DNA of 64,000 bases from positions 1-64,000 of the IMG/VR virus record IMGVR_UViG_3300044731_002337; one strand, 5' to 3'. Each line of letters begins with the position of its first letter. Position 1 is the stretch's first letter. Positions 23,399-62,791 of the stretch are shown piece after piece. The notes beneath the pieces were generated by a model. The model ran no database searches. It saw only the letters and a program-made list of their open reading frames with translations, and was not told the DNA's origin. The translations under genes and the position numbers were made by a program.

Positions 23399-23924
23399 TT
23401 ATTCTTGATCGTCTTCCTCTTCTTCTTCCTCCTCCTCTTCTCCTACTTCGAGTGGAGTTAACAGTCGTGTAAGAAATTGTTGGGCATCATGAGCGAGATC
23501 ATTGTTCATGGCCAGATGATGGAATCGAAACAGATTTCGGATAAAGTCTGGGAGATCGTCTACATAGTACATGGACCAATCTCCTGAATCACCACAATGT
23601 TCAATGCTGTTGGGTGGATGAATGAACATTGCATCATTGACAGCGTCCACTCCCACTTGCAACTCGACATGGTCATCAAATCGATCCACATCCAAGTGTC
23701 GTCCATTCACATTGGTAATCACAGTGATATTGGAATTGACCCCCAAACAAATGTCTACAATTCCGCTCACAAATGCCCTTGTATCTACACATAAAAAATA
23801 AAGTTAGGACATGGTTGAGAAAAGGATTTAAAGAAAGCCAACTTGGATCAGCATTCGCGTATTGAGATTCCCATTGTTCCATTTCCGTTTCAGGTAAGTT
23901 GTCGGGGTACTCTTGCATCACCAT
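23399..23924 (-). CDS. Spliced hypothetical protein, complement(join(23399..23784,23843..23924)), 155 aa; paralogue of 40165
   Basis: 58-nt GTTGGC..CTAAC..GTAG intron joins two ORF-track frames; product aligns to 40165 (RAFVSGIVDICLG vs KAFMISVQDICFG; LPxFIRNLFRFH). Confidence 0.6.
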
Positions 23925-23962
23925 TTCTGCTTGTGACTGTATAATTGTTACCCAAATCACGT

Positions 23963-23976
23963 CCGGAAAATCCAAA
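23963..23976 (-). promoter_or_regulatory. Putative promoter motif TTTGGATTTTCCG
   Basis: 39 nt upstream of ATG 23924; an inverted partner at 24018..24030 serves the divergent gene. Confidence 0.6.
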
Positions 23977-24017
23977 AAAAAAAAATGTTTTTCGACAGAA
24001 ATAAATAAACTTTTTTT

Positions 24018-24030
24018 TTTGATTTTCCGC
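24018..24030 (+). promoter_or_regulatory. Putative promoter motif TTTGATTTTCCGC
   Basis: 45 nt upstream of ATG 24075. Confidence 0.6.
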
Positions 24031-24074
24031 GGAATCGGTTTTCATAGCGGTAACAAGACAAGGTATCAGTCTTG

Positions 24075-25023
24075 ATGGCTTCTGAGGAAATGACTGGTTT
24101 GCTTTCTTTACCATGTGATGGAGTTCATCATAAGGAGGATGTGTTACGCAATGTGCCGTCTGACGTGTATTTGGACATGGATGACATTAAGGGGTATATG
24201 GAGGGTGAAACACGTGAGTGGCCGTGCAAGGAATGTCTCTGCGCCATGATTGAGCGATTACATCCGTAAGTAGAGATTATTGGTATGTGTATTCACTTGG
24301 CATGGTTAGGCGTGATGAGAAATATCGAAACATGTTTTTCTATGAGCGTTGGCTTTCTGGGATATTCCATCAGATCAAATTTTTGAATTTTAGTATGAAG
24401 CAAATGTATCAAAGCTTTGTGAACCGTGGAGACATTTACTTGACATACGATGTACGAAAAAAGCTTGCGAATGGAATAGGATCAAAACTCTGTGGTGACA
24501 AGCATGTACCCGAGAAGACGATGCTACTACAACGACTTGATATGCCGCCTGAAGACATTCGTGATGACAACAAGTGCAAGGAATGTCTCGAGTACTTTTT
24601 CAAGGAAAATCTCACGTAAGAATAGTTTTTTTTTTATTTCCTATTGATACCATGATTTATGGTAGATCATGGGCCTTGTTGCAACAGTATTGTGAGGAGG
24701 GTCGATTTGCGATGGCGGTCAAGTTGGTATCGTTTACACCAAGCAATCGATTGAAGCTGAACCAATTTCCAACGAGTGTACTCAATGTTCCACATGAAGC
24801 GATGGCGAATTCTGCTTTTCACCAGATTCGGTGGCTGATCCTTCATGGGAAACATCTTGGTATTCATGATTGTGAGTTTTGCAAGACTGAAGCCAGCATC
24901 AATTATGATCCGGACAATGAGGAGGATGAGGAGGAGGAAGAAGAAGAAGAAGAAAAAAGTTGCCTAGGAAAGAGAAAACATGAAGACGTGTTTCCATGCA
25001 TGGATGTTGTGAGTAATAAATAG
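24075..25023 (+). CDS. Spliced three-exon Cys/His (putative Zn-binding) module protein, join(24075..24265,24310..24615,24666..25023), 284 aa
   Basis: Introns of 44 nt (GTAAGT..TTAG) and 50 nt (GTAAGA..GTAG), both phase 2, restore one frame across three ORF-track fragments. Confidence 0.85.
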
Positions 25024-25047
25024 ATAATAAGAAAACGACTTGCTCTC

Positions 25048-26454: not shown

Positions 26455-26597
26455 CCTTCTAAACTGCCAGGGGTAATGAGAAATGGTGCAATGCAGAACT
26501 TATTATTCCGTAATAAAATCTGGCGGTCATCATGGATGTCGACATTAGGAGAATCTTCCGATACATAACAACATGCGATGATCTTGAGTGAAAAACT

Positions 26598-27995: not shown

Positions 27996-28005
27996 ATTAG
28001 AAATG

Positions 28006-28019: not shown

Positions 28020-28055
28020 GTGGATCTATTGGTAATTTTTTGTATTTTGTGGGCA

Positions 28056-28499
28056 ATGTTTTTTCTACTTTCTAATAAGGGATCTTCGTCAAAGCCAAGA
28101 GCAAACCAGGCCAATTTAATTCGTCATGTAAGGTGGAAAGGTTTTGATATGAACAAGACATTGGAGTTATTACCATTTGAAATGAATGGGGAAGTAAGAC
28201 ACAGTATTTTCAAGATTGTGGCATTGGAGAATTGCTCATCGTCACATGTGCATGCCAAGGACATAATACTAGAACGTTTGGGATTATCCATGACACCAGA
28301 ATTGATCATGGAATTTTTGGAAAACAATGCCCATCCATGTGAAGGATGTGTTGAGTACATGATCTTGATGTTACGAGATCCAGAGACATGTTATTCCATT
28401 TTTTTGGAACATGGACATGAAGAGGCGGCTTTACGAACATTACATATCCATCAATGTGATGTAAAGCCTTCCTCATTTGAAAGGATTTTTCAGTCATAA
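28056..28499 (+). CDS. Intronless member of the Cys/His module family
   Basis: CSSSHVHAKDIILERL..PCEGCVEYMILMLRDP aligns with exon modules of 24075 and 44196 genes. Confidence 0.7.
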   Translation: MFFLLSNKGSSSKPRANQANLIRHVRWKGFDMNKTLELLPFEMNGEVRHSIFKIVALENCSSSHVHAKDIILERLGLSMTPELIMEFLENNAHPCEGCVEYMILMLRDPETCYSIFLEHGHEEAALRTLHIHQCDVKPSSFERIFQS

Positions 28500-28506
28500 A
28501 ACATGT

Positions 28507-29373
28507 TTATTTTTCTATGATGAGTGATAATTTAAGTATGGAACGTAGAACATCACGGGTGTATAATGGATGACAAGTAAAAGGGTTTGGTTGACGATTA
28601 AATACGAGAAAGGGTATCCATCCACAATAACTTGAGAAATGACGAATGAAATGAATGGATTCTTGTAGTTTTTCCTTGACTACATTTTCTAATGGGGACA
28701 TAAACTGCAATTAAAGTTGGATAAATAATAAAAATAATAATAATACCATGTTTTCTACATTTTTGAATTCGAGTCTTGGTGAAGCTCCCATAGAGAGAAG
28801 GGTATTGACGTATTTTCGTGACATGGGATCTCTAATCGCTAGTTCAAGTGGCGTTCCATCCAGAGAGGGGCAATTCAAGTCCATGTTCGGTATTTGTAAG
28901 GCGATTGGAACCAATGCATAGAATTTGGAAAAAAGTGCGGTAGTTAACAGGTTATGTCCCTAATGTAACTAAGTTTTGGTTGTTCATCAGTATAAATTTA
29001 CCATGTAGCCTTTGAGATGTGGGTTGGCGTTGTAATGTAGAAGTAGGTGAATGATAGAGAGACGTGTAGTAATAAACTCTGGATATCGACTGGTTAGGTT
29101 GGCAGCAAGTAAAAGTGGAGTTAGTTGTCGAGTATCCTTGGCGTCGACATTTGCATTATGAGATAGTAATTCCGTAACTGTATGGAGATGATTGGTAATG
29201 ACAGCAGCATGTAAAGGTGTTCTTTGAAGGTTTGTGCCAGGAGGTTCAAATATTCCAACATGCATTTGATCATTCCATTGGATACATTGATCATTGGTAA
29301 AATTCACATTGGCACCCAAATGGAGGAAATGGGTGATTGATTCTCCTTTCGCAATGTTCAAATATAGATCCAT
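28507..29373 (-). CDS. Spliced ankyrin-repeat protein, complement(join(28507..28704,28747..28959,29002..29373)), 260 aa
   Basis: Two 42-nt phase-0 GT..AG introns; TPLHAA, TPLLLAA, GTPLELA ankyrin motifs; C-terminal HPLYTRDVLRSILKLS. Confidence 0.85.
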
Positions 29374-30178: not shown

Positions 30179-30811
30179 TTATTTATATGAAGAGAGTTTC
30201 ATAATGGATCGAAGAATATCTCTTGTATACAATGGATGTTCAATCTTTTTGCTCCATATCAATAATGGTATGCATAACTCTTCTGTCATGACTTGTTTCT
30301 GTAGATAAATAAATGAGGATAAATACACACATTAATATATACCATGAGAGCAATAGTGGAATGACAGGAATAATTTTGAGCAACATCTAAAGGGGTTTTG
30401 TGCTGTATTAAAACCAAAAAGAAAAGAAAGATTATGGGATGATGAGGTGACAATGTTACATTATGTGGGGTGGTTGAAAATGGGTTGGCTTTGTAATGTA
30501 GGAGACGTTTGATGATGTCGATGTGACCCATACTGCATGCATCATGTAATACGGTATATCCATCCATATAGCTGGAATGAACATTCGCCTTGTGTTCAAG
30601 TAATATGTCGACGCAAAGTACAGAGTTATACCGAACAGCTACTCGTAACGAACCATCATCTGGCTGAAATGATTTTGTAATGATTTATTTTTATTCAATA
30701 TGAATGTACCTTGATTCCTTGGTTAAGTAGAGCAAATAGAGTATATATATTATTGGTGCGTGCAGCATAGTGCAATAATGTTTCTCCTGGTTGTTGTTGT
30801 TGTTGGTTCAT
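30179..30811 (-). CDS. Spliced ankyrin-repeat protein, complement(join(30179..30298,30343..30402,30460..30663,30710..30811)), 161 aa
   Basis: Three phase-0 introns of 46, 57 and 44 nt; GETLLHYAA, GYTVLHDAC, KTPLDVA; C-terminal HPLYTRDILRSIMKLS shared with 28507 gene. Confidence 0.85.
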
Positions 30812-39690: not shown

Positions 39691-39704
39691 AAAATTTTCA
39701 AAAG

Positions 39705-39777
39705 TACACAAGACGAGACTCGAACTCGTGACTTTTGGCTCATAAGACCAACACTCTACCAACTGAGCTACTTGTGT
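39705..39777 (-). tRNA. tRNA-Ile (anticodon UAU), intronless
   Basis: 73-nt cloverleaf: acceptor ACACAAG/CTTGTGT, TAGCTCAGTTGGTAGA, anticodon arm TTGGT-CTTATGA-GCCAA, GTTCGAGTC; T-runs downstream. Confidence 0.95.
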
Positions 39778-40164: not shown

Positions 40165-40707
40165 ATGTATCCGAAAGAGCAAGGTGATAGGTTGAGGGAA
40201 TGGATGTGCCATTTTCAAATTCGACTGGATCATGTGGCAAGGCATCAAGAGGAAGAAGAGGAAATGGGTCGTCGCGCAAGAAGAAAATTTTGGGAATGGG
40301 TCAAGAAACGATTTCCTTCTTTTGGTACAGAATCAAGTGAACTTTCTGGGTTTTTAAGGAAGCGAAAGGCATTCATGATCTCTGTACAAGACATTTGTTT
40401 TGGATCCCAAGATGATAGCATGACATTAGTTGCTGCAAATGGAAATTGTACCTTCATGGAAAAAACAAGAACACGATTTGAATTATCTTGTCCAGAAGAA
40501 AAAGAAGAAGAAAAAGGGGACGAATGGTTTGTGTTGGATGAAGATATACATGTGAGTAAAGGCCAAGATGGATCTGAAGCTGCAAGAGCACAATATCGTC
40601 GTCGACATTTACCGCTATTTATTCGTAACCTATTTCGGTTCCATGAGTTACCCTATGAGAAGAAATTGGCTATGGACGCCTTGTACTTTTTGGAAGCATG
40701 TTTATAA
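40165..40707 (+). CDS. Hypothetical protein, paralogue of the 23399 gene
   Basis: Shared DICFG and LPLFIRNLFRFHEL..LAMDA..FL. Confidence 0.75.
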   Translation: MYPKEQGDRLREWMCHFQIRLDHVARHQEEEEEMGRRARRKFWEWVKKRFPSFGTESSELSGFLRKRKAFMISVQDICFGSQDDSMTLVAANGNCTFMEKTRTRFELSCPEEKEEEKGDEWFVLDEDIHVSKGQDGSEAARAQYRRRHLPLFIRNLFRFHELPYEKKLAMDALYFLEACL

Positions 40708-40768: not shown

Positions 40769-41584
40769 GTGGAAAAAATCAAAATGTGGTTAACACTTGC
40801 TCATGTCTACGGTATTTTACTTATGCCAAATCAATGGATTAGTTTTGTAGTGGTACTACTGAATGCATGGATGATTAGGACCCCCTATTTGTGTTTTGTA
40901 AATTGTGTGTTGAATATGGTTGGTAACATGTCATGGTGCGGTGTAGTATTTTCAATGCTATGGTTATTGGATTCTCAAAATTTGGTCATTGGTGAGTTAC
41001 CTGGGAAATTTAGAAAAGAGGTCGAATACATTGTAAGTGTAAGTAAAGATTTGAAACCAGATAATTCAGAGATTTTTTGGACGAGTGTATTTGCAGATAA
41101 TGGTCAGACAACCAATATTCCTTACTCTCAAGGGCTATATGATTACATATCTGGTTTACGGTGGCAAATCATGGAGTTTTGGTGTAAGCGAATTAATGGG
41201 TTTGGTACGCTCATCAATCCATCCAATTCAGTAGAACAAGATTGGCATATTGATTATACATGGTCATACACAAGTCTATTTATACCCATTGAAAATTGTA
41301 CATCATCCAACATGACTCAGATTATGACAAGTTCAATTGTATGGGGATATTTCCATAATTCACGTAATATCAAAGAAAAAGAACAAGAGAATGTTATGGC
41401 CACCATCATTGTACCAAGGAAATGGTCATTGTTGTTATTGCCACCAAGTACATTTCACCGTGGCGTAAAGAACAACTCTGATATGGATCGAACATTGTTT
41501 TGGATATCCTATCAGAGTCGAACCGATCCAATCGAACATGAACATGCAGTGCAAGACTTTACCAAGAAATCAATAGACTTGTGA
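40769..41584 (+). CDS. Membrane-anchored 2OG-Fe(II) dioxygenase-like (PhyH-like) protein
   Basis: QDWHID (HxD), FHRGVKNNSDMDRT (distal His and Arg); hydrophobic N-terminus. Confidence 0.6.
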   Translation: MEKIKMWLTLAHVYGILLMPNQWISFVVVLLNAWMIRTPYLCFVNCVLNMVGNMSWCGVVFSMLWLLDSQNLVIGELPGKFRKEVEYIVSVSKDLKPDNSEIFWTSVFADNGQTTNIPYSQGLYDYISGLRWQIMEFWCKRINGFGTLINPSNSVEQDWHIDYTWSYTSLFIPIENCTSSNMTQIMTSSIVWGYFHNSRNIKEKEQENVMATIIVPRKWSLLLLPPSTFHRGVKNNSDMDRTLFWISYQSRTDPIEHEHAVQDFTKKSIDL

Positions 41585-41675
41585 CGCTAGTTCATTCAAA
41601 GAGGTAACGCTAGTTCATTCAAAGAGGTAACGCTAGTTCATTCAAAGAGGTAACGCTAGTTCATTCAAAGAGGTA
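41584..41675 (-). repeat. Tandem array, 23-bp unit (+ strand ACGCTAGTTCATTCAAAGAGGTA) x4, core family 1
   Basis: Exact 23-nt periodicity, intergenic between convergent genes. Confidence 0.97.
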
Positions 41676-41700
41676 GTAAAAAGGTCATGATGAAAATATT

Positions 41701-43225: not shown

Positions 43226-44196
43226 TTATTCTAGTTGAATTGGATGATTCTTGTTGTGGTTGCAAAATCGACATGCATTATTCTTCATGGTAATAGGAAC
43301 ACGACGTCTCAACGCATTCAAGAGTTTGTGGAAGTCAGAGTTTTCTTCCTCCTTGTGTTTCACGTCTAGATCTGATTCCTTCAGAGTCACCTTACGAATC
43401 CGAAACAACCTTGATGCCCAGTTGAACCTTCCATGACAGACCAAAAATCGGAATTCCAGTGTTGGGCTAGATAACCATGAGTTGTACCAAAAAAAAACAC
43501 AAACTTACTCTAAAACGTTTTCCATAATGTGTTGAATGCAGTCGAGACACCTGAGTTGTGGGCTGATATGGGTTGGATACATTTCCAAAAGTTCAAACAT
43601 GTCCGACTTGGATTTAGAATGTTTGATTCCGCATGCATGGGTACAGACTCGTTCAAATAGAAAACGTCTTTCCTTTTGCGTCTTGTAGGCTGAACATGCC
43701 AAGTACTTGCGGTGCAATGTCTTGATGTTGAAATCGTTCCTGGCCGCGTATTGAAGTAATTCCCTCTTTTGTGGCTCTTGTGTGAACCATTCCTTGATCC
43801 CAGTATCACTAGCCAAAAATGAGAATGATTACATACAATGTAAAATTACGGGTCAAGAACTTTGATGAGGTACTTCATGCACACTTGGCATGGCGATTCC
43901 GTGTCTTCCAAATAGGCAGCAATCATGTCATTTTCTACGTAGACATTCATTTTGCGAATCAATTCAACCTTGGGGTGAGATTCGCCGTCACATGGAGCAG
44001 CAACAAGGCGTTCAAGAAATTCAACTTTTTCGTCATTGCGCAGGTCGTGCTCCAAACTTCGGTAGACTCGGTTCGCTTCCTTCACGTCCTCAACTGTTTC
44101 CAAAGGATTCTGTTGCAAGTCCGGTTCCAAAAGTTCTAATCCAGCAGCTATTTCCCTATGAAGTTCATTTGTTTTGGCAATCATTTGCGAGTCCAT
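43226..44196 (-). CDS. Spliced three-exon Cys/His module protein, complement(join(43226..43466,43509..43808,43850..44196)), 295 aa; paralogue of 24075
   Basis: Phase-2 introns of 41 nt (GTAATT..CTAG) and 42 nt (GTAAGT..CTAG) at positions equivalent to those in the 24075 gene. Confidence 0.85.
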
Positions 44197-44527: not shown

Positions 44528-44702
44528 GTTCATTCGAAGAGGTAACTTCTTGTTCATTCGAAGAGGTAACTTCTTGTTCATTCGAAGAGGTAACTTCTTG
44601 TTCATTCGAAGAGGTAACTTCTGGTTCATTCGAAGAGGTAACTTCTGGTTCATTCGAAGAGGTAACTTCTGGTTCATTCGAAGAGGTAACTTCTTGTTCA
44701 TT
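44528..44702 (-). repeat. Tandem array, 24-bp unit GAAGTTACCTCTTCGAATGAAC(A/C)A x7, core family 1, probably non-coding
   Basis: 24-nt periodicity in a ~500-bp divergent intergenic region. Confidence 0.97.
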
Positions 44703-51254: not shown

Positions 51255-51814
51255 ATGGATGTGTGTAAGTTTTATGCGGTCAAGAGTGAATTGGAAAGTG
51301 TGGTGACGGATTGGGAAGCGATAAGGCGGATTCTTGTAAGGTCACCTTTAGCTGAAACGATTTGGAAGAAACAATTGTTTTTGGGGGCAATAAGGACGTG
51401 TTGTGATCATTCTGTCACTCAATATGAAGTCATGCCTTTATTGGCTACTCATATTACGGAAGAAGAGTTTGAATCCATTACTAGCACTTGTCCTTGGTGT
51501 TTCAAAATGGCAATTCAATGGCTATATGAGTAAGTTGTTGTGGAAAAAAAACATAGAAATGATTCTAATTTTTTTTTTTATGAAATAGACCTGAAAGAGT
51601 ATTGGAGAGTATGATTACAAAAGAACGTTATGACTTGGCATTGCTCATCTTGAAGCATACGACATTTCACTTGGATTGTCACTTTGTCATGACGCATTTT
51701 CAAAAACATCCTTATCCCAATAAGCAAGGGCTATTAGTATTGCATCAATGTATATTACGTTTCAAGATTCCAGAAGAAGAGGAAGAGGAAGAGGAGGAGG
51801 AGGAAGAAGAATGA
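51255..51814 (+). CDS. Spliced two-exon Cys/His module protein, join(51255..51529,51589..51814), 166 aa
   Basis: 59-nt phase-2 intron GTAAGT..CTAAT..ATAG; exon 2 PERVLESMITKERYDLAL matches exon 3 of the 24075 and 44196 genes. Confidence 0.8.
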
Positions 51815-51946: not shown

Positions 51947-52990
51947 ATGGCTCAATTTGATTTTCTGGAGAAACAATGCGATGCCTTGTGTGAGGCTTTA
52001 CAGATATTTGAACATACAGACTTTGGTTTTCCAGATAAACCAGATGAGTTTTGTGCAAAAGTATACCAAGGAAATCCAGCCATTCAATGTTGTCGAAGGA
52101 TAAAAGGCAAACGTTCATATCATGTGTATAAAGACACTACTGGGGCCAATAGTGAAGAGATCGACAAGCTTACCAAACAAGAAAAGTTCACAGTCTTGCA
52201 AGAATTCCTCAGAAAAGAATTGAATCCGGTTATTCGCGAGTTTACCAGAAAAAGTTATAAATATCGATGGTTTTCAAAGGAAGATTCTGAAGATGATTCC
52301 GATGACGATTCCGATGAACAAGGAAACAAGAAGAAGAAGAGAAAGCTAAAACATATTGAAGTTTACGATCCAATTTATGAAGACGTAGTGTATCTGAAAA
52401 CCGCTTGTTCAATTGAGACAGAATCCCAGAAAATCAAATATGATCCAAATGCAACAGCCATTGATGAAGACATGAAGACACGTATTCAAAGACACAATCG
52501 ACGAGAGGATGAACGAAATGGAACTATTTCTCAGATTTGTGGAGAATCATTGGAAACTTTGCCTGAAGAGACTTTTGAACGGGCAAGAAAGAAACAAGCC
52601 ATTGTCAAGCATATTTCTATTTCTTTATTTGGTGATGAAAAGGAAAACGATTCTGATTACGAAAATGACGAGTATAGTACTTGCAAATCATATTATGCTC
52701 ATATCCACATCAAACGACTAGTCACTTATCGAGGGAATGTCATTACCATTCTCGGTGGTCATGAAGGACTCTTGGTAAAGCATCATCATACAGGCAATAA
52801 TGATTCGGATAGCGATGACGACACGGAATCAAGCTCTTCAAATGATGAGGATACTAATGACAAGAAACCAAAGATTAGACCCAATGAAGAAATATATCCA
52901 CCACATCGATTTCGAGAATTGGCTGAATATATATTTCAATACAATTCAGGTACTTGTTTATTATTTGATTACAATAAGGAAACTAAGTAA
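51947..52990 (+). CDS. Hypothetical acidic/basic low-complexity protein
   Basis: 347-aa ORF. Confidence 0.75.
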   Translation: MAQFDFLEKQCDALCEALQIFEHTDFGFPDKPDEFCAKVYQGNPAIQCCRRIKGKRSYHVYKDTTGANSEEIDKLTKQEKFTVLQEFLRKELNPVIREFTRKSYKYRWFSKEDSEDDSDDDSDEQGNKKKKRKLKHIEVYDPIYEDVVYLKTACSIETESQKIKYDPNATAIDEDMKTRIQRHNRREDERNGTISQICGESLETLPEETFERARKKQAIVKHISISLFGDEKENDSDYENDEYSTCKSYYAHIHIKRLVTYRGNVITILGGHEGLLVKHHHTGNNDSDSDDDTESSSSNDEDTNDKKPKIRPNEEIYPPHRFRELAEYIFQYNSGTCLLFDYNKETK

Positions 52991-53261
52991 TATCAGGGCC
53001 ACAAGGTTCCAAATTTGCGGAATATTGGCCAAGAGCTGTGGAAGAATTAGAAAAGGTATTTCACGATCCAAGTCGTGGAACCCATTACAAAATCAAGTAC
53101 CAAGTCAAGCTAAAACAACAAAAAGACAAGGTTAAACAATGTTTCCAAGAATTGGGATTACTTTGGGATGCGTTCAACTCAGTGTTGGATTATATAGTTG
53201 AGCCTCTATATATTGACTCGTATTTTGATGTTTGCTACATTGGAAAACGAAACTTTATTTA

Positions 53262-54944: not shown

Positions 54945-55231
54945 TTTTTTTAATCTTTAATTTAATTAAATCACATTAATGAAATAATATGTTCGGGAAT
55001 TGTTATAAAATAGTTTTTATTGTCAAGTTATGTGAAAACGTACCGCTAATTCTATTATATGATTTTTGACAAAAATTTATAGCTGCTTGTTTATCTTTGA
55101 TGTGATGAAACCAATGAAATATTGCTGTTTTGAAACGTTTTATATCATTCCAACGAAGACCATTTTTATGTTTGGTGGTATCTGTCTGAAATACACCAAC
55201 GATGTACTTGTTATTAGAACATTCTTCGATT

Positions 55232-55711
55232 TCACACTGTTTCCAAATTATATTTGGGGTCCCATCGGTTTGAAAAGTATAGTAGAAAGTGATCGATGTT
55301 ATTCTTTTCGTTATAATCTTTTATCATGAATAACCACCATATATGCTGAGCTTCTCTACAAGAATTTGTATTATTAATTATACGGTAACCATCAGAATAT
55401 TTATTTTGATGAGATACTTGAAGTTCCTTTACTTTTTTATGCATATTATATAATTCAATATCTTGCAAGATAAATTCATTAATTGCGTCTGGTATGTCTA
55501 ACTGCTTTGTATATTTTTTATGTATAGCTGTGTTAGTATAACAATCTTCAGTTTGAGTTGATTGATCTATCATTACTTTTGGGATTATAATATCATCGTC
55601 ATCCTCCTCTTCAATCTCACAGTCACAAACTCCATTCAAAAATGATGGTAAATCATTGTGATCAAATATACAATCACGTCTTCTTTTTCGTGATTTCTTA
55701 CGTTGACTCAT
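55232..55711 (-). CDS. Hypothetical protein
   Basis: ORF from MSQRKKSRKRRR (NLS-like). Confidence 0.6.
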   Translation of the reverse strand: MSQRKKSRKRRRDCIFDHNDLPSFLNGVCDCEIEEEDDDDIIIPKVMIDQSTQTEDCYTNTAIHKKYTKQLDIPDAINEFILQDIELYNMHKKVKELQVSHQNKYSDGYRIINNTNSCREAQHIWWLFMIKDYNEKNNIDHFLLYFSNRWDPKYNLETV

Positions 55712-55988
55712 TTTACAATATATTTTATAATTCACATTTTGAAAAGTAAAGCGCGACTACAAAACTAATTTAGAAAATGGATTCTTTCACCCATTATTCA
55801 AAGTAATTTCAGTAGAAAAAACATTGAATAACTCTATATTTTACGTTACCTATGGGTTTGGAGGGATTTGCTAATAGAGGGGTTCCGAGAAACCATCACT
55901 TTCAAGGCATAAAATAAATGTCTTGGAGGGATCGATTGACATCCCTCCATAGGTTTTTCACAAACTAAAAACCCAAAATATTTTCAAA

Positions 55989-56921: not shown

Positions 56922-57464
56922 TTATTTGTCATACACTTGGAAAAGACGTTGCATGAATGGGTAGCCACTTTCATAGGTTGAGATGTACTTGTAAAAAGGG
57001 GCCAAGGAAACTTTGTTACATTGGTGCACTTGAATCGATTCTTCAATGAGACGAAGATAACGTTTACGAATAGCCTTGACCATAATAATAAAATGAATTC
57101 TTCGATTGTTCGTAAAGTGTGTTAGGTCTATGAGATAGTCTTCTTTTAGGAAACTCATGAGTGCTTCAGAAGCTTCGTTGCCAGAGATGAAGGGTCGAAT
57201 TTGTTGATAAACATTCTGATCTAGGTACTGACAGAGCTGTTCGAACAAGTTTAGTAAATACTTGTATCGTAGAGTTTCATCTTGTGTTAACGGATCTGTG
57301 TCGCTCCATTCGTGGTCTTCATCACATGTACTTGTTAGATAATGAATGAATAGTTGAGTCGCTTTTGTTGAAGAGAGGGAATGAGTTTGGAGGTATTGTA
57401 TTAGTTCCTGTGTATAGGGTAGATTATAAATGGTGGATAAGTTTGCTGGAGGTTTGTTGCCCAT
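56922..57464 (-). CDS. Hypothetical protein
   Basis: 180-aa ORF. Confidence 0.7.
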   Translation of the reverse strand: MGNKPPANLSTIYNLPYTQELIQYLQTHSLSSTKATQLFIHYLTSTCDEDHEWSDTDPLTQDETLRYKYLLNLFEQLCQYLDQNVYQQIRPFISGNEASEALMSFLKEDYLIDLTHFTNNRRIHFIIMVKAIRKRYLRLIEESIQVHQCNKVSLAPFYKYISTYESGYPFMQRLFQVYDK

Positions 57465-57599
57465 AGATTCTTTTTATAAACAAGTTGCAGGACTCTGAAC
57501 AAAACAAAATGCGTTATAGGTGTATCAAGGTTTGTCTTTTACGAAATCGGGTTTTATTCAACAAAAAATTATGCTTTGCACCAAACTGTGTTATTGAGG

Positions 57600-60500
57600 T
57601 TATGTAATATTATGTCGAGTTAGCTTTTCTTCTGCGATGGCGAGCCGTGATTGTACAGCGGATAGAGTAGTAGATAGTTCTTGTATGGCTTTGATCATGG
57701 GGGAGATAAATTCGGTGTAGGAGAGACTATAGGAATCTTTTTCAGGGTCGTATGAAATTCCAGCAAAGTCATTCAAAGACAATCCACTATTAGTAACGGT
57801 GGATTGGACTTGTTGGGCTAGTAAACCATAGTTGGTCTTGGTATAAGTGTGATGTATAGTCTCTGTGTTGTTGTTAGCATCTGGTGGTCCCTCGACATTA
57901 TAATCTTTGAATTTATAGCTTACAGGTCGTAGTGCATTGATAAAACTTAGCCCAAGTGGTGAATCAGTAATATTCTCTTTTAACCTTTCATCAGAGCTTT
58001 GGTATACTGTTTCACAATAAATTTGTTTGAATTGAAGTCCTGATAATCCAATGTTAGACGTATTATTGGACAAGGGGAGAATGTTAACACCTACATACAT
58101 ATATCCTATATAAGAATCCAAGTATCTATTGGAGGGAGCACCTAAACGATAGGTATTTGTCGCTAGTGGATATAAGCTACGAGTATTCATATCCCCAGTA
58201 CTAGTGGTAGTAAATACAAAACCAGCAAAACTGCCACCATTTCTTCCGCCAGTAGAGTTATCACAATAAAGATAAGGTGTATATTGACCGCCACCATTAT
58301 CAAGCCCAAATTCCATAAAACTTTTACCACTGGTATGAATAACTACATTGGTTTTCACATTCGGGTCTGTTCCCGGAGAATATACATTGAGAGAACCTTG
58401 GCCACCAGTAACGGATAACGAGCCTGTTACACTTGTACTACCCGAATTCGTGACAGAAAATCTTTCCACGGCAGACGAATCTTGCACCGCCATCTTACCA
58501 TTAGTACCCAATACAGAGATATCATTCATGGGTGTAATTGGACCACCATTTGATTTGGATAGACGTATATTCCTTATATCATGAGTGGTACTAGCCCCAC
58601 CAGTGAATGACCCAAACCCATAATAATCATTAGCTTGTGATAATGTTCGACGAGTATCAGTAAAAGGGTAGAATCCTGGAACCGCCCATTCATTGATGGT
58701 GATCCAAAACTGATTGATACAGAATACTATTTTAATTCGCATCCATGAATTACTAGATAGTCCAGCATTAGAACTACTAGTGGATAAATTGGTTGTCGCT
58801 AATAAAAGACTGGGGCTACCACCATTCCAATATAGATTTAATTCATCGTCTTGATATTCATCAATTACTACAGAGTAACCGCCACAGTTTGCTGTATTAG
58901 CAGTGAGGTTAGTAGGTACGCTGCTATTGTTAAAAAAGAACCAAGTAGCATCAGCTCCAGCAATATTACCAATCATTAACTCAAATTCCATCGTAAATGA
59001 ATTTCCTGGATGCCCTCTATACACCAATTGACCTTGTTGGTTCTGCAAGTTAGGGGTTAATTGCACGTAACCAGATTGTTTAGAAGCTGATCCTTGTACA
59101 TATCCTCCTCTTAAGGTTGATCCGGCACCTAAACCGTCTTCCATTTGAATAACACTATTGTACGCACTAGGGTTCAAAATCGTTCCCATGGCCGAATTAT
59201 CAGAGGGAGTAATATTCAAGGAACCGGTAGACAAGGTAATGTATCCATTGGAATTGTTATGGTACTGTAACATTTCATTTGATGTACCATATGAACACCT
59301 ATTTCCCAACATGGATAAATATCGATTTGTACCATCCAAGCGAAATACGGTAGTGATGACAGAGGAAGCCCCTTCTGATTGGAAATCAATATTTCGCCCT
59401 AACCCTGATACCATACAATTGGTAGTTGAACCATCATGAAACATCCACAAATCACTACTATCACCTAAACTTAATCTCACATTATCAAAACACTTGACTC
59501 CATTCTGGGTTAATGAACATCTTGTAATTGTGGAATCAGTCAACAATAAGCTATTGGATCCCAACACAAACCTCATATCACATGAATTCAAAGTTACGGT
59601 AGTCAAACCAGATCCAGCTGAAATACTCGATCTGGTGTTAGAACTTTCTTTAAAGGTAATACCAGACACACTACATGCTCCATTACTATCTCTGGTTATA
59701 ATAGTAGATACCGTATTATCAGAAGAGACAGCAGCCAATTTTGCAGTAGTTATCGTACCATCCGTAATGTCTGCATTCACAATCAACGATGTACTACATT
59801 CACCTGATCCATTCGAAGCGGTATGCACTACCCCAGCAGAGCTAAGACTTGAAACGGTCAATGCATTTGTTATTAAAGTACCCGAAATGGTATCCCCAGT
59901 TTTCAATACATTTAACGAAGCCGCTCCTGTCAGACTGGCGGTAATCGTTCCAGCAGAGAAATTACCAGAAGAGTCTCGAACAACGAGGTGACTGGCGGTA
60001 TTACTGGAGGATACAGCAGCTAGTTTTGCATTGGTAATCGTAGCATCAGTAATGTCAACGTTATCAATGAGGGAGGAGGAAAAAACACCAGATGTGAGGT
60101 GAGCAATGCCTGTACTAGATGAGCCGGATAGTGTTAGACCAGTAAATGTTGGCGAATCAGTTTCAGCAAGATCTTGGGGAAGACCACCTGCAGGACCTGA
60201 AGTGATCACACCATTACTTGCAATTGATAATGAACCACTTGAAAGTCCAGTGAGAGTTAATCCTGCAAATGTAGGTGAAGCTCCAGTATGAATGTTTTGA
60301 GGTAATGATAAGGTAATGTGTCCTGTAGTAGCAGATACTAGCACTTGATTACTAGTTTGAGTGAGAGATAAGACGCCATCATTGGTAATCGCATCAGAGG
60401 TGAGACTTATACCCGTACCCACATTTAGTTTAGCAGTTAAGGTAGCTTGGGTTGTCGCGTTAGAGAGATAGGATAATGCACTTGTGACATCTGTAGCACC

Positions 60501-60902
60501 AATATAGAGATTATTCGTATATGTAGTATTGAATCGTTTGGTAAGTGACCCTATATTAATGGTATTGGTAGTGGAAGGTACAAGGGTTGCAGTATCTTCT
60601 AGTGTGATGGTACCACTTGCATTTATAGCTGTAGTGTGAAAAGTTGTCCATCGATGGGTTGAATCGCCAAGAGCAACAGACGAATTAGGTAGGAGACCAT
60701 CAGATTGAATTCCTAGATTCCAAATTCGTAGTTCACCAGCACTATCGCGTAGAGTTCCAGAGCAATTGGTAAAGGATAAAGTACCATCAACCTCTGTGTT
60801 GTTTCTAATCTGAATGATAGAACCTGTAGACGAAAGACTTGGAGTAAAGATGCCATCAGATCCTACTCTGACTTCGGTTTGTGACATGCGAGAATTAGAC
60901 AT
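57600..60902 (-). CDS. Tail-fibre-like protein with lectin-like (ConA-type) insert and C-terminal peptidase S74 chaperone
   Basis: DITDATITNAKLA and ASLNVLKTGDTISG shaft motifs; VQLTPNLQNQQGQL..GADATWFF lectin-like segment; SSDERLKENI..LRPVSYKF..GLLAQQV..SYTEFISPMIKAIQEL. Confidence 0.85.
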   Translation of the reverse strand: MSNSRMSQTEVRVGSDGIFTPSLSSTGSIIQIRNNTEVDGTLSFTNCSGTLRDSAGELRIWNLGIQSDGLLPNSSVALGDSTHRWTTFHTTAINASGTITLEDTATLVPSTTNTINIGSLTKRFNTTYTNNLYIGATDVTSALSYLSNATTQATLTAKLNVGTGISLTSDAITNDGVLSLTQTSNQVLVSATTGHITLSLPQNIHTGASPTFAGLTLTGLSSGSLSIASNGVITSGPAGGLPQDLAETDSPTFTGLTLSGSSSTGIAHLTSGVFSSSLIDNVDITDATITNAKLAAVSSSNTASHLVVRDSSGNFSAGTITASLTGAASLNVLKTGDTISGTLITNALTVSSLSSAGVVHTASNGSGECSTSLIVNADITDGTITTAKLAAVSSDNTVSTIITRDSNGACSVSGITFKESSNTRSSISAGSGLTTVTLNSCDMRFVLGSNSLLLTDSTITRCSLTQNGVKCFDNVRLSLGDSSDLWMFHDGSTTNCMVSGLGRNIDFQSEGASSVITTVFRLDGTNRYLSMLGNRCSYGTSNEMLQYHNNSNGYITLSTGSLNITPSDNSAMGTILNPSAYNSVIQMEDGLGAGSTLRGGYVQGSASKQSGYVQLTPNLQNQQGQLVYRGHPGNSFTMEFELMIGNIAGADATWFFFNNSSVPTNLTANTANCGGYSVVIDEYQDDELNLYWNGGSPSLLLATTNLSTSSSNAGLSSNSWMRIKIVFCINQFWITINEWAVPGFYPFTDTRRTLSQANDYYGFGSFTGGASTTHDIRNIRLSKSNGGPITPMNDISVLGTNGKMAVQDSSAVERFSVTNSGSTSVTGSLSVTGGQGSLNVYSPGTDPNVKTNVVIHTSGKSFMEFGLDNGGGQYTPYLYCDNSTGGRNGGSFAGFVFTTTSTGDMNTRSLYPLATNTYRLGAPSNRYLDSYIGYMYVGVNILPLSNNTSNIGLSGLQFKQIYCETVYQSSDERLKENITDSPLGLSFINALRPVSYKFKDYNVEGPPDANNNTETIHHTYTKTNYGLLAQQVQSTVTNSGLSLNDFAGISYDPEKDSYSLSYTEFISPMIKAIQELSTTLSAVQSRLAIAEEKLTRHNIT

Positions 60903-60937
60903 TTGTTTGTTTCCTTCTTTTTTTAATATGTTTTATT

Positions 60938-61862
60938 TTATTCTTGGTTTGGAAACGAGGAAGAATGGAGTTTACGAAAAGTCTCCTTGTATTTAGGTAA
61001 CCCACCATTTGCTTCAGTATATTCAAACAAGGCCTCAGCTTCGATATCTGAACTGGGAAGATCAATTTCCATAGGATCCATCCATTCTTTAAATTGCATA
61101 TTGATAATGCATTGCCTCATGTCCCCATTAGTTTGGGCGATTAGGTGATCAAGGTCCAAGTCCACCTTTTCTTGTAGGGCAATGAATTGAAGCCGTTGCT
61201 TAATGTGATCATGTCGTAATGGTGCAAATCGAAAGGCCAAACATCTGGATTTGATGGGGTCAATGATCTTGTGTAGATAATTCACGATGAAAATAAAACG
61301 ACAATTCTTCACGTAGGTTTCCATAACTCGTCGTAACAAGAGTTGAGCATCTGATGACAATCCATCCGCTTCATCAAGTATCACTAGTTTAAGACCTTGG
61401 CTACAAATAAAAATAAAACCAAAGTATTAAACATAAATAATCACCCATCAAAGTGGGGTCTTGAAGAAGCAAAAGGTACAACCCTTTGACGCATAATATC
61501 AATTCCATTTTCATCTGAAGCATTAATCTATTGCCAGGTAAGTGTTGATAGCAAAAGAAGAAAAAAAAATACCTCTAGTGTTTCGACAAAATGTTTGGAA
61601 ATAATGTGGGCTGCTGAGGTTTTTCCTATTCCATTCGAGGTGAATAGGGGCGATTACGAATATGGAGAACAACCTGTGCCTGGAGGACCATGGAGGAGCA
61701 TGTGTGGAATATTACCTTTTTCAATCATGCGAGTAACTAGATATAGGTGTATAAAAAAAAACATATGAACATGAATTTACTTGCATGTATGATATCATCT
61801 TGTGAGACCATATCTGAAAAAGTCTTGGGTCGATAAACTTCGGTCCAAAGTCGACAATCCAT
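60938..61862 (-). CDS. RFC: Replication factor C small subunit, complement(join(60938..61400,61445..61527,61573..61625,61674..61736,61781..61862)), 247 aa
   Basis: Four introns (44, 48, 45, 44 nt) restore LWTEVYRPKTF, HMLLHGPPGTGKTS, LEINASDENGID, KLVILDEAD, SRC. Confidence 0.93.
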
Positions 61863-62040
61863 GGGTTTATTAGTATTTTTACCCCGAAAATTGCCCGATC
61901 GGAGGATTAACCCGTAAGTCGGGATAAAAGATTGGGTCGATTCTCGGGCTTGAGTTGGGAATGATGTAGAAAGTCGAAAGTCGGACTTGACATGAATCCC
62001 GGATTTCGGACTAGATGTAAATCCCGGATTTCGGGCTGGA

Positions 62041-62791
62041 TCACAAGAAGTCATCAAGCGCGTGTAAAAGCCGATAATCGCATAAAGGTGATTGTCTCAA
62101 TGTGATGATGGCTTTAAGACGATGGGCTGATTTGAAGGCCGCCTACAATAACTTAATACCGTAAAAAAAATGAAAAAGAAAAAGTAGTACATGATCATAT
62201 TGAAGGGAAGTTTGATGAAGAAAATTGGTCGCTGAGGGTAAAATCCATGCCATGTGTAATAAATCAAGGCGTGTAAGAAGATGATGTAAGAGTAATGAAA
62301 AATCTTCCGGATAATATGTATCAGTATGATTGACTACAATTCCATATCGTCCACCTAAGAAACTATGAATAACGAAAAAAGGACAAGGTTCATTAAGAAA
62401 AAATACCTTGAAGAAGATCACCAGAATGAAGAGTGATGTGTGATGTGCGACGAAATGTTAATAGAGGATAGACAAGAAGTTGGTGTAGTTTCAAGTCGCG
62501 CAGATAAATGTGTTGAAGAGATTCTTTAGAGTGAGTGGCAACGTAATTGTAAAGGGCGTTAGTAAGGTCTTGACTATGTTGTGTAGCATAGTCTGGTAAA
62601 GGTTCAGGTTGACAACATTTCAAATAAATGGCGGTAACAAATTCTTGAATGCTATACTTGGTAAGTAGTTCATTATTCCCAAAATGGATGAATTGGAATT
62701 CACGATAAACATGAATGTCTAGCTTCACCATAAACTTCTCATGTTCTACTGCGAAAAAAAGTTCCGAACACACATCAAAGAAGTGAAACAT
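62041..62791 (-). CDS. Spliced hypothetical protein, complement(join(62041..62142,62191..62354,62407..62791)), 216 aa
   Basis: 52-nt (GTATTT..TTAG) and 48-nt (GTACTA..GTAG) T-rich introns give one continuous frame; no homology support. Confidence 0.6.

What the first reader, a model, noticed from the sequence alone, without database searches (positions are those of the whole stretch)
23399..62791. Virus-like genome peppered with 41-59-nt spliceosomal introns (17 introns in 8 genes)
Manual reconstruction gives 17 introns, all with GT donors and YAG acceptors, mostly T/A-rich. Lengths: 44, 48, 45, 44 (RFC); 46, 57, 44 and 42, 42 (two ankyrin genes); 44, 50; 41, 42; 59; 58; 52, 48. Each one restores a continuous frame. 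Viruses do not encode a spliceosome, so this implies nuclear transcription and dependence on a host with very short introns. AATAAA after many stops and a Pol III-type tRNA agree. The giant genes and CPW-ankyrin genes need no introns.
Basis: partly seen in the sequence, partly recalled or inferred. Interest (0 to 1): 0.82.

Follow-up and report, generated by a model that had tools for sequence, protein, structure and literature searches.

The report
Tiny spliceosomal introns in giant virus
A 295-kb giant-virus genome from lake water carries at least 19 very short (41-59 nt) GT-AG introns in nine genes, so those genes should work only if the host cell's splicing machinery processes their RNA. 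A few other giant viruses are known to do this, so it is a new, unusually compact example and not a new phenomenon.

Summary
All 17 introns exist at the stated lengths in eight genes between 23399 and 62791. Each starts GT, ends YAG and restores one open frame.

Frame restoration alone is not above chance in my decoy tests. The case rests on four independent lines:
- The spliced RFC protein aligns seamlessly to solved RFC structures and is uninterrupted in 149 of 160 other viral RFC loci.
- Two distant paralogues (25% identity) share both intron positions and phase, and an intron-less paralogue reads straight across the junction.
- In another lake sample, 10 of 11 differences fall inside RFC introns, including 1-nt indels.
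- I found two more introns outside the window, in DHFR-thymidylate synthase, placed to the residue.

The contig is a Nucleocytoviricota-like genome (PolB, Rpb1, Rpb2, A32) that also occurs in Lake Mendota. All nine intron genes carry an upstream TCCG box shared with polB, RNR and Rpb2, which suggests an early, nucleus-dependent gene class.

No RNA data could be found, so splicing itself is inferred. The AATAAA and tRNA arguments add nothing. "Peppered" overstates it: about 4% of genes, clustered in the left 81 kb.

Pandoraviruses, punuivirus, some chloroviruses and mirusviruses are precedents, so this is a new member of a known kind.

The parts
23399..23924 (-). Gene g58, 2 exons, 155 aa, acidic tail. 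Paralogue of ORF 40165-40707.
   Evidence: Model. The downstream exon has no ATG for about 52 codons. T-run+GGATTTTCCG box lies 45 nt upstream of the ATG.
23785..23842 (-). Intron, 58 nt, GTTGGC..TGTAG, phase 1, with CTAAC 23 nt from the 3' end.
   Evidence: Weakest of the set: no homologue crosses the junction.
24075..25023 (+). Gene g44_50, 3 exons, 284 aa, CxxC-module family.
24266..24309 (+). Intron, 44 nt, GTAAGT..TTAG, phase 2, 10 aa after a CxxC motif.
   Evidence: Same position and phase as 43809-43849 in the paralogue.
24616..24665 (+). Intron, 50 nt, GTAAGA..GTAG, phase 2, 10 aa after a CxxC motif.
   Evidence: Same position and phase as 43467-43508 in the paralogue.
28507..29373 (-). 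Ankyrin gene, 3 exons, 260 aa.
   Evidence: Exon 1 hits Pfam Ank at E = 6e-12.
28960..29001 (-). Intron, 42 nt (3n), GTAAAT..TTAG, with several in-frame stops.
28705..28746 (-). Intron, 42 nt (3n), GTATTA..GCAG, 83% AT, with an in-frame stop.
30179..30811 (-). Ankyrin gene, 4 exons, 161 aa. Its C-terminal PLYTRD..LRSI..KLS motif is shared with 28507-29373.
   Evidence: Exons 1 and 2 hit the Ank profiles collinearly.
30664..30709 (-). Intron, 46 nt, GTACAT..TCAG, phase 0.
30403..30459 (-). Intron, 57 nt (3n), GTAACA..ACAG. It has no in-frame stop, so retention would not break the frame.
   Evidence: It has a T-rich tract before the acceptor. It is supported only by the splice signals and the ANK repeat register.
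30299..30342 (-). Intron, 44 nt, GTATAT..ACAG. An alternative 32-nt donor GTGTGT is also in frame.
   Evidence: The 44-nt form matches the ATG|GTA junction of the paralogue.
43226..44196 (-). Gene g41_42, 3 exons, 295 aa, CxxC-module family. Paralogue of 24075-25023 at about 25% identity.
43809..43849 (-). Intron, 41 nt, GTAATT..CTAG, phase 2.
   Evidence: The intron-less paralogue ORF 28020-28499 reads ..LRDPET.. straight across this site.
43467..43508 (-). Intron, 42 nt (3n), GTAAGT..CTAG, phase 2, with an in-frame stop.
51255..51814 (+). Gene g59, 2 exons, 166 aa, poly-E tail, one CxxC module.
51530..51588 (+). Intron, 59 nt, GTAAGT..ATAG, phase 2, again 10 aa after CxxC.
60938..61862 (-). 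Replication factor C small subunit, 5 exons, 247 aa.
61737..61780 (-). RFC intron 1, 44 nt, GTAAAT..CTAG.
   Evidence: Has a 1-nt deletion in run X4.
61626..61673 (-). RFC intron 2, 48 nt, GTTGTT..ATAG. It splits the Walker A motif GPPGTG|KT.
   Evidence: Run X4 shows 6 substitutions and three 1-nt insertions here.
61528..61572 (-). RFC intron 3, 45 nt, GTATTT..ATAG.
61401..61444 (-). RFC intron 4, 44 nt, GTGATT..GTAG.
62041..62791 (-). ORFan gene g52_48, 3 exons, 216 aa.
   Evidence: No homologue in 5.8 billion proteins.
62355..62406 (-). Intron, 52 nt, GTATTT..TTAG, phase 1.
62143..62190 (-). Intron, 48 nt (3n), GTACTA..GTAG, with an in-frame stop.
55186..55237 (-). Extra candidate intron, 52 nt, GTGTGA..TCAG. 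It would add about 60 aa to ORF 55232-55735. Unverified.
52956..52996 (+). Extra candidate intron, 41 nt, GTTTAT..TCAG. It would add about 90 aa to ORF 51947-52990. Unverified.

Best explanation
These are genuine U2-type (GT-AG) spliceosomal introns in a large DNA virus of the Nucleocytoviricota kind. There are at least 19 of them, 41-59 nt long (mean 48), T-rich, in at least nine genes. Seventeen lie in eight genes of the window and two lie in DHFR-thymidylate synthase at 79.6-81.1 kb of the same contig.

The virus encodes no spliceosome, so the pre-mRNAs of these genes must meet the host's spliceosome. At least part of the infection cycle must therefore run through the host nucleus. The host's splicing machinery must also handle introns of about 48 nt efficiently.

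The genome encodes its own RNA polymerase (Rpb1, Rpb2), and nearly all other genes, including polB and both polymerase subunits, are uninterrupted. The most likely life style is therefore mixed, as in pandoraviruses: a nucleus-dependent phase for a subset of genes and virus-driven expression for the rest.

All nine intron genes carry a TCCG box about 40 nt upstream of the ATG. About 40-50 intron-less genes share it, among them polB, ribonucleotide reductase and Rpb2. I infer that this marks an early or replication promoter class whose transcripts are made in, or pass through, the nucleus.

Shown: the interruptions, their signals, their absence from homologues, their conservation in paralogues, relaxed constraint inside them, and the promoter association.

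Inferred: actual splicing, the nuclear phase, the timing of expression, and the small-intron host.
For: 1. RFC. Removing the four segments gives a 247-aa protein. Its exon pieces align collinearly and without gaps at the junctions to solved RFC chains; on human RFC5 9uiq_C, exon 1 maps to 4-23, exon 2 to 29-46, exon 4 to 72-97 and exon 5 to 100-202. Intron 2 splits the Walker A motif GPPGTG|KT. The spliced protein is one uninterrupted tblastn HSP across all four junctions in 75 of 80 IMG/VR loci and 74 of 80 metagenome loci.

2. DHFR-TS. Pfam Thymidylat_synt positions 1-79, 79-104 and 119-266 lie on three consecutive ORF pieces. Removing 80329-80386 (58 nt) and 80529-80574 (46 nt) gives ..KGIK|IWNGNASREYL.. 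and ..DYTG|KGIDQ... The result is uninterrupted in 79 of 80 viral TS loci.

3. Paralogues. 24075-25023 and 43226-44196 share 25% identity. They have both introns at the same aligned residue, 10 aa after a CxxC motif and in phase 2. 51255-51814 has the same arrangement. The intron-less paralogue 28020-28499 reads through the junction.

4. Population data. In a 261-nt contig of run X4, 10 of 11 differences fall in the 92 intron nucleotides: 6 substitutions and three 1-nt insertions in intron 2, and a 1-nt deletion in intron 1. The single exon change is synonymous (binomial p = 2e-4). Run X2, from another year, reproduces the intron-bearing sequence exactly. No intron-less DNA joint was seen.

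5. Signals. GT in 19/19, A at +3 in 16/19, YAG in 19/19, 73.5% AT and 47% T. Lengths are not biased to multiples of three, and 6 of the 7 3n introns contain in-frame stops.

6. Too short for self-splicing introns, and Rfam finds only the tRNA in the window. They are not repeats or introners.

7. The TCCG box lies at -31 to -49 in 9/9 intron genes against 41/239 other genes (p = 3e-7), or 16/60 within the same 81 kb (p = 4e-5). The related 7-mer TTCCGAT was the top hit of an unbiased upstream k-mer scan.

8. Viral identity is supported by PolB, Rpb1, Rpb2, Pox_A32 and a D5-like domain.
Against: - No RNA run holding this sequence was listed, so no spliced read has been seen.
- There is no common branch-point motif, and the donor consensus beyond GTA is loose.
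- Three introns (23785-23842, 62355-62406, 62143-62190) have no homology support.
- The 57-nt intron at 30403-30459 is in frame and free of stops, so it could be coding.
- The virus has its own RNA polymerase, which is usually read as a sign of cytoplasmic transcription.
- No capsid gene or VLTF3 was found, so the contig may be about half a genome. Whether late or structural genes also carry introns is unknown.
- I settled on the TCCG core after seeing the data, so its p-value is optimistic.
Confidence: 0.85

Rival explanations
1. The contig is not a free virus. It is an endogenous or latent giant-virus element in a protist chromosome, whose genes acquired host introns after integration, as in GEVEs and punuivirus. 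The segments would still be spliceosomal introns, but they would reflect residence in the host genome rather than a lytic nuclear phase.
For: Introns are well documented in GEVEs and in latency genes of punuivirus (10.64898/2026.10.09.758095; PMC12768974). The intron genes cluster in one arm and share a distinct upstream box. Metagenomic DNA cannot distinguish virion DNA from integrated DNA.
Against: There is no cellular flank in 295 kb. Coding density is 90% with intact PolB, Rpb1, Rpb2, RNR and A32. Two independent assemblies stop at about the same length, 294,773 and 299,086 bp. Ankyrin multigene families sit at both ends, as at poxvirus-like termini. It is the largest contig of its metagenome and recurs in many lake samples over several years.
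Confidence: 0.1
2. The interrupted genes are decaying pseudogenes, and the GT..AG ends are coincidental.
For: Frame restoration by some GT..AG deletion is easy to obtain by chance. Three of the genes have no homologues.
Against: In RFC and TS the exons are flawless and the interruptions sit exactly between conserved residues. Intron positions are conserved between paralogues that have diverged to 25% identity. Variation avoids the exons. The extended signals are non-random.
Confidence: 0.02
3. The segments are skipped during translation (programmed ribosomal bypassing, as in T4 gene 60 or the 27-55-nt byps of Magnusiomyces mitochondria), or are removed from the DNA as in ciliate IES excision.
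For: The size range of 41-59 nt resembles both byps and short IESs (my own knowledge, not a tool result).
Against: Bypassing needs matching take-off and landing codons. Here the segment always ends in TAG or CAG, and the preceding exon codons vary: the last three exon nucleotides are ATG, AAG, CAA and others. IESs are bounded by TA repeats, not GT..AG. DNA contigs from four other samples keep the segments, and no intron-less DNA joint exists.
Confidence: 0.01
4. The introns arrived ready-made. RFC, DHFR-TS and the ankyrin genes were captured from host genomic DNA together with host introns, rather than the virus gaining introns one by one. This concerns origin, not mechanism, and is compatible with the best explanation.
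For: RFC has four introns in a 744-nt coding sequence, a density typical of cellular genes. Bifunctional DHFR-TS and ankyrin genes are typical eukaryotic acquisitions. The introns are not repeats, so they did not spread as introners.
Against: RFC exon 5 is no closer to eukaryotic RFC (84 bits to human RFC5) than to other viral RFCs (38-61% identity in the best segment). The virus-specific CxxC family and an ORFan also carry introns. A clearly eukaryote-derived kinesin gene has none.
Confidence: 0.3

Closest known systems
Pandoraviridae (and Mollivirus): spliceosomal introns validated by RNA-seq in 7.5-13% of genes (PMC5995976)
   Same: A nucleocytovirus that encodes its own RNA polymerase yet has canonical GT-AG introns in a minority of genes. 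This is read as dependence on the host nucleus for part of the cycle.
   Different: - The genome here is about 295 kb at 38% GC, against 1.9-2.5 Mb and GC-rich for pandoraviruses (from my own knowledge).
- Introns here are only 41-59 nt, with up to four in one 744-nt gene, against about 1.2 per intron gene in pandoraviruses.
- About 4% of genes carry them.
- There is no transcript proof here.
- An A32 ATPase is present.
Punuivirus, the latent giant virus of Chlamydomonas reinhardtii (bioRxiv 10.64898/2026.10.09.758095)
   Same: Two-part architecture. A subset of genes (61 of 506) has host-like spliceosomal introns and its own regulatory marks. The rest use a viral promoter.
   Different: - Punuivirus is integrated, and its introns average 176 bp and mark latency genes.
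- Here no integration is seen and introns average 48 nt.
- Here they sit in replication and nucleotide genes (RFC, DHFR-TS) and in multigene families, and share a box with polB, RNR and Rpb2.
Intron-rich mirusviruses, Okeanovirales and Styxvirales (PMC12768974)
   Same: Environmental large DNA viruses of protists with many GT-AG introns, from marine and freshwater samples, with nuclear reproduction inferred from genome sequence alone.
   Different: - Those viruses lack polB and RNA polymerase, have HK97-type capsids and terminase, and their introns peak at about 80 bp.
- Their introns are enriched in morphogenesis genes and often carry homing endonucleases.
- This genome has PolB, Rpb1, Rpb2 and a Pox_A32 ATPase, no terminase hit, and introns too small to hold genes.
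Chlorovirus spliceosomal introns (for example in the PBCV-1 pyrimidine dimer glycosylase and some DNA polymerase genes; recalled from my own knowledge, cited in general terms in PMC5995976 and PMC12768974)
   Same: A nucleocytovirus with a nuclear early phase and a few GT-AG introns.
   Different: Chloroviruses lack an RNA polymerase and have only one or two such introns of about 85-100 nt. This genome has its own polymerase and at least 19 shorter introns.

Membership tests
U2-type spliceosomal intron | GT at the 5' end and AG at the 3' end | tested here: met
   19 of 19. This includes the six introns whose ends are fixed by homology in RFC and TS.
U2-type spliceosomal intron | Extended 5' splice site able to pair with U1 (GTRAGT-like) | tested here: inconclusive
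   A at +3 in 16/19 and T at +6 in 12/19, but full GTAAGT in only 4 introns. The host's consensus is unknown.
U2-type spliceosomal intron | Branch point and pyrimidine tract upstream of YAG | tested here: inconclusive
   Introns are 47% T and Y at -3 holds in 19/19. A YTRAY motif is found in only 11 of 19 introns, at variable distances.
U2-type spliceosomal intron | Precise removal restores the reading frame and the conserved protein | tested here: met
U2-type spliceosomal intron | Absent from mature mRNA | not testable with these tools
   No RNA run holding the sequence was listed. Only DNA contigs could be laid.
U2-type spliceosomal intron | Not a self-splicing (group I/II) or tRNA-type intron | tested here: met
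   The introns are 41-59 nt. Rfam finds only tRNA-Ile in the window.
Nucleocytoviricota | Family B DNA polymerase | tested here: met
   127 bits to PF00136 in a 984-aa uninterrupted ORF. The Atlas neighbours are Nucleocytoviricota clusters.
Nucleocytoviricota | A32-type packaging ATPase | tested here: met
   Pox_A32 is the only Pfam hit of the 336-aa ORF: 34.9 bits against a cut-off of 22.8, covering positions 8-207 of 242.
Nucleocytoviricota | Multisubunit RNA polymerase | tested here: met
   Rpb1 at 141 bits and Rpb2 at 208 bits, both uninterrupted.
Nucleocytoviricota | Double jelly-roll major capsid protein and VLTF3 | tested here: not met
   No hit to PF04451, PF16903 or PF04947, even at E = 10 for PF04451. 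The contig may be incomplete (CheckV estimate 55%) or these genes may be too divergent. I therefore write 'Nucleocytoviricota-like, lineage unplaced'.
Mirusviricota | Terminase of the herpesvirus or tailed-phage type, and an HK97 capsid module | tested here: not met
   No hit to PF02500 or PF03237. No Pfam model exists for the mirusvirus capsid module, so that part was not tested. The presence of A32 argues against membership.

The most novel reading that the evidence does not exclude
In an uncultured freshwater lineage of giant viruses that carries its own RNA polymerase, spliceosomal introns are confined to one promoter class. This is the TCCG box, which also drives polB, RNR and Rpb2. The genome would then encode a hard-wired two-compartment programme: an early, nucleus-processed gene set and an intron-free set expressed by the virus. 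The extreme intron size profile (41-59 nt, GTA..TAG, standard genetic code) would work as a fingerprint that names the still unknown host among lake protists.
Probability: 0.35. Interest if true: 0.7.

Novelty: new member of a known kind. Interest (0 to 1): 0.55.

Why it matters
Spliceosomal introns are one of the few sequence features that tell where in the cell a virus expresses its genes. They are still considered exceptional in nucleocytoviruses: pandoraviruses, a few chloroviruses, punuivirus and decaying endogenous copies.

This genome adds an environmental lineage with its own RNA polymerase. Its nearest PolB relative is 60% identical and its nearest A32 relative 70%. Core replication and nucleotide genes (RFC, DHFR-TS) are split by introns near the minimum size a spliceosome can handle.

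Three practical consequences follow:
1. Prokaryote-style gene calling, as used for giant-virus MAGs including the Lake Mendota series, miscalls these genes as fragments.
2. Intron length and splice-site profile, together with the standard stop-codon usage, give a testable host signature.
3. The link between introns and one upstream box gives a concrete hypothesis about nuclear and viral expression programmes. Existing lake metatranscriptomes could test it.

Tried and rejected
- **Intron-aware gene finder.** I built an exon-chaining finder scored on codon log-odds and ran it with GT..YAG and ten decoy signal pairs. It did not recover even RFC, and the real signals did no better than decoys. Codon bias is too weak here, so I dropped the tool. 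I keep the result only as a warning that frame restoration alone proves nothing.
- **Counting all frame-restoring deletions.** I enumerated every 38-65-nt deletion that restores a frame and tabulated them by terminal dinucleotides. The count is swamped by ordinary gene boundaries and antisense frames. No clean genome-wide intron count came out of it.
- **RNA evidence.** None was listed.
- **Close relatives for intron presence or absence.**
  - The metagenome and IMG/VR scans with RFC returned only relatives at 36-61% identity.
  - The CxxC family has no relative in IMG/VR.
  - g52_48 is an ORFan.
  - The 147-kb relative found through A32 is not held for whole-record search.
- **Extending the contig** to find a capsid gene failed.
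- **A 58-nt candidate at 41039-41096.** It would truncate ORF 40769-41584, so I judged it a false positive.
- **Introners or repeat-derived introns.** Rejected, because only low-complexity matches were found.
- **Order-level classification.** Not achieved. The protein libraries give no organism names, and most large ORFs have no Pfam hit.

Full report
**Context**

The window is the first 64 kb of a single 294,773-bp contig. IMG/VR holds it as a linear virus record from a lake-water metagenome, JGI 3300044731, contig Ga0453692_0000001. A 299,086-bp version of the same contig sits in metagenome 3300059473, the 20-year Lake Mendota co-assembly (PMC11374980; bioRxiv 10.1101/2025.06.13.655548). That giant-virus study does not mention introns. 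Near-identical DNA occurs in at least a dozen lake and freshwater runs from 2020-2024.

The genome is 38% GC. ORFs of at least 100 aa cover 90% of it (248 ORFs), and it uses TAA, TGA and TAG as stops in 161, 61 and 26 of them.

Genes found:
- An uninterrupted family B DNA polymerase, Rpb1, Rpb2 and an A32-type ATPase whose only Pfam hit is Pox_A32.
- A D5-like domain, ribonucleotide reductase, SNF2 and PIF1 helicases, and a kinesin.
- Kinases, ankyrin proteins, RNA ligase, UDG, an AP endonuclease, ubiquitin, and fibre proteins with an endosialidase-chaperone domain.

Not found: an NCLDV capsid protein, VLTF3, or a terminase. Most large ORFs have no Pfam match. The nearest PolB and A32 relatives are 60% and 70% identical. 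I call it Nucleocytoviricota-like, lineage unplaced, and possibly incomplete.

**Checking the observation**

I rebuilt the eight gene models from the sequence. Each starts GT and ends YAG, and removing them gives one open frame per gene. The limits of the finding are the stop of the first gene (23399) and the ATG of the last (62791).

**Is it more than chance?**

Frame restoration alone is not. My exon-chaining gene finder did no better with GT..YAG than with ten decoy signal pairs. Hundreds of thousands of frame-restoring 38-65-nt deletions exist for any pair of terminal dinucleotides. The argument "each one restores a continuous frame" therefore carries little weight, and independent evidence was needed.

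**Independent evidence 1: homology**

The spliced RFC gene (60938-61862, minus strand) encodes a 247-aa small clamp-loader subunit. Its exon pieces, searched separately, hit solved RFC chains in order and without gaps at the junctions. On human RFC5 (9uiq_C), exon 1 covers residues 4-23, exon 2 covers 29-46, exon 4 covers 72-97 and exon 5 covers 100-202. Intron 2 splits the Walker A motif GPPGTG|KT. The spliced protein aligns as one uninterrupted HSP across all four junctions in 75 of 80 IMG/VR loci and 74 of 80 metagenome loci that encode RFC.

While looking for introns outside the window I found that bifunctional DHFR-thymidylate synthase (79555-81053, plus strand) lies on three ORF pieces. 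These match Pfam Thymidylat_synt positions 1-79, 79-104 and 119-266. Two GT..TAG segments of 58 and 46 nt separate them. Removing the segments recreates the highly conserved TS sequence to the residue. 79 of 80 other viral TS loci are uninterrupted there. These six introns have ends fixed by homology, and all six are GT..TAG.

**Independent evidence 2: paralogy**

Genes 24075-25023 and 43226-44196 are paralogues at about 25% identity, built of modules with a CxxC motif. Both introns of each gene lie at the same aligned residue, 10 aa after CxxC, in phase 2. Gene 51255-51814 has its single intron at the same place. ORF 28020-28499 is an intron-less single-module paralogue that reads straight across the junction. 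Intron positions kept through that much protein divergence, with every exon still open, mean the spliced product has been under selection.

**Independent evidence 3: polymorphism**

Contigs from four other lake samples were laid on 57000-62950. Run X2 reproduces the intron-bearing RFC and neighbouring gene without a single difference.

Run X4 has a variant contig over 61582-61842 with 11 differences:
- Six substitutions and three separate 1-nt insertions inside RFC intron 2.
- A 1-nt deletion inside intron 1.
- One exon substitution, which is synonymous (GGA to GGG).

Ten of the 11 differences fall in the 35% of positions that are intronic (p = 2e-4). The length changes (48 to 51 nt, 44 to 43 nt) would be frameshifts or insertions if the segments were translated. 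No DNA contig lacks an intron, so the segments are not removed at the DNA level.

**Anatomy of the introns**

| Feature | 19 introns | Comparison |
|---|---|---|
| Length | 41-59 nt, mean 48 | |
| AT content | 73.5% | 59.5% in the exons |
| T content | 47% | 29% in the exons |
| Donor | GT 19/19; A at +3 in 16; T at +6 in 12 | |
| Acceptor | TAG 15, CAG 4 | |
| Phase 0 / 1 / 2 | 8 / 5 / 6 | |
| Length a multiple of three | 7 of 19 | 6 of these 7 contain in-frame stops |

There is no shared branch-point motif. The introns are not copies of one another or of anything else in the genome. Rfam finds nothing in the window but the tRNA.

The one in-frame, stop-free segment (30403-30459) could in principle be retained. 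Three introns (23785-23842, 62355-62406, 62143-62190) rest only on ORF logic and signals. Gene 62041-62791 is an ORFan. Two further candidates in the window, 55186-55237 and 52956-52996, look similar but are unverified.

About nine of roughly 250 genes are affected, all between 23 and 81 kb. The other long non-ORF gaps in the genome look like spacers or repeats, not split genes. "Peppered" therefore holds for this arm but not for the genome.

**How it most likely works**

A virus has no spliceosome, so these transcripts must reach the host's, which is nuclear. The genome also has its own RNA polymerase, and its polymerase, polB, RNR, helicase, kinesin, giant and fibre genes are uninterrupted. 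A mixed cycle like that of pandoraviruses is therefore the best model. In pandoraviruses the virion lacks the viral polymerase, early transcription is nuclear, and 7.5-13% of genes have validated introns (PMC5995976).

An unbiased k-mer scan of upstream regions gave TTCCGAT as the most enriched 7-mer, 21-fold in 28 genes. Its TCCG core lies 31-49 nt upstream of the ATG in all nine intron genes. It occurs in 41 of 239 other genes (p = 3e-7), and in 16 of 60 other genes within the same 81 kb (p = 4e-5). A long variant, T(8-11)GGATTTTCCG[C/G], precedes four of the intron genes and a dozen others. The box also precedes polB, RNR and Rpb2.

I read it as an early or replication promoter class and infer that introns are tolerated only in that class. 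This parallels punuivirus, where intron-bearing genes form a separate regulatory module (bioRxiv 10.64898/2026.10.09.758095). It also fits the 'evolutionary trap' idea for viruses with introns only in early genes (PMC12768974). I chose the core after looking at the data, so the statistics are indicative only.

AATAAA occurs within 60 nt after 27% of stops, against 14% in shuffles. It is even more frequent upstream of genes (35%), and 40 of 104 occurrences overlap the stop codon in A-rich spacers. It is not a specific sign of nuclear polyadenylation. The tRNA-Ile(UAU) at 39704-39777 is an ordinary 74-nt tRNA. The T-run after it is part of the recurrent upstream box of the next gene. Neither point bears on the conclusion.

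**Host**

The host is unknown. The introns are shorter than those reported for pandoravirus hosts, punuivirus (176 bp) or mirusviruses (peak about 80 bp). TAA is the main stop codon, so hosts that reassign TAA and TAG, as many ciliates with tiny introns do, seem excluded. This last step is an inference from general knowledge.

**Rivals**

- **Endogenous or latent element:** possible but unsupported. There are no cellular flanks, the core genes are intact, and two assemblies end at about the same length.
- **Pseudogenes:** contradicted by perfect exons, conserved positions and the polymorphism pattern.
- **Ribosomal bypassing:** contradicted by the invariant YAG end without matching take-off codons.
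- **DNA excision:** contradicted by the DNA contigs.
- **Capture of host genes with their introns:** this may explain the origin of some introns (RFC has four in 744 nt), but not those in the virus-specific family or the ORFan.

**Verdict**

It is a new and unusually compact member of a known kind.

Noticed in passing
window 23969(-), 24024(+), 39683(-), 40121(+), 42548(-), 44238(-); also G000:C1 69467, 73649, 75310, 75375, 76955, 78233, 145785, 239996, 240912: A roughly 20-nt upstream element, T(8-11)GGATTTTCCG[C/G], lies 37-55 nt before the ATG of at least 16 genes. A shorter TTCCGAT box sits at about -40 of some 40 more genes, including polB, RNR and Rpb2. It is probably a promoter class, and all intron genes carry its TCCG core.
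   Followed up: partly
whole contig; switch at about G000:C1:282500: The plus strand has a GC skew of about +0.2 over 282 kb regardless of which strand is coding (+0.21 in plus-strand genes, +0.15 in minus-strand genes). It flips to about -0.2 for the last 12 kb. This suggests a replication-linked asymmetry with a switch point near the contig end, and may mean the contig is one arm of a larger genome.
   Followed up: partly
window 1-110 (+), 41608-41677, 42231-42495, 44546-44690 (-); also C1 72856-72928, 175365-175506: A 19-nt core, GTTACCTCTTCGAATGAAC, recurs in tandem arrays of period 24 nt (23 nt in one array), some inside ORFs. It also forms four 27-nt repeats at the very start of the contig.
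   Followed up: no
window 10034-16027 and 16046-22060 (-): Two adjacent paralogous giant ORFs of 1997 and 2004 aa have weak DUF3638/DUF3645 (helicase-like) hits. Both are uninterrupted.
   Followed up: no
G000:C1:162029-166858 (-), L183: The Rpb1 open frame also gives a weak mRNA capping-enzyme hit (22 bits, below the cut-off) in its C-terminal part. This may be a polymerase-capping enzyme fusion.
   Followed up: no
G000:C1:211949-213820 (+): A kinesin motor gene (E = 1e-79), clearly of eukaryotic origin, has no intron.
   Followed up: no
G000:C1:146780-150124 (-): The ribonucleotide reductase large subunit is 1114 aa, and its barrel-domain match comes in two stretches. It may carry an insertion or an intein.
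   Followed up: no
whole contig: No Pfam-detectable major capsid protein, VLTF3 or terminase occurs in 295 kb, and most ORFs over 370 aa have no Pfam hit at all.
   Followed up: partly
window 55186-55237 (-) and 52956-52996 (+): Two further GT..CAG segments of 52 and 41 nt would extend ORFs 55232-55735 and 51947-52990 by about 60 and 90 residues.
   Followed up: partly
window 1352-4123 (+) and 57600-60902 (-): Two fibre-like proteins of 923 and 1100 aa end in a Peptidase_S74 (endosialidase chaperone) domain, as in phage tail fibres.
   Followed up: no
G000:C1:143778-144649: An 870-bp non-coding stretch consists of degenerate short tandem repeats, which translate as KNIF/KHFY-like units in all frames.
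   Followed up: no
window 62861-63097 (+): A ubiquitin gene (78 aa) attracts many reads from other organisms in the metagenomes. Depth there is not informative.
   Followed up: no
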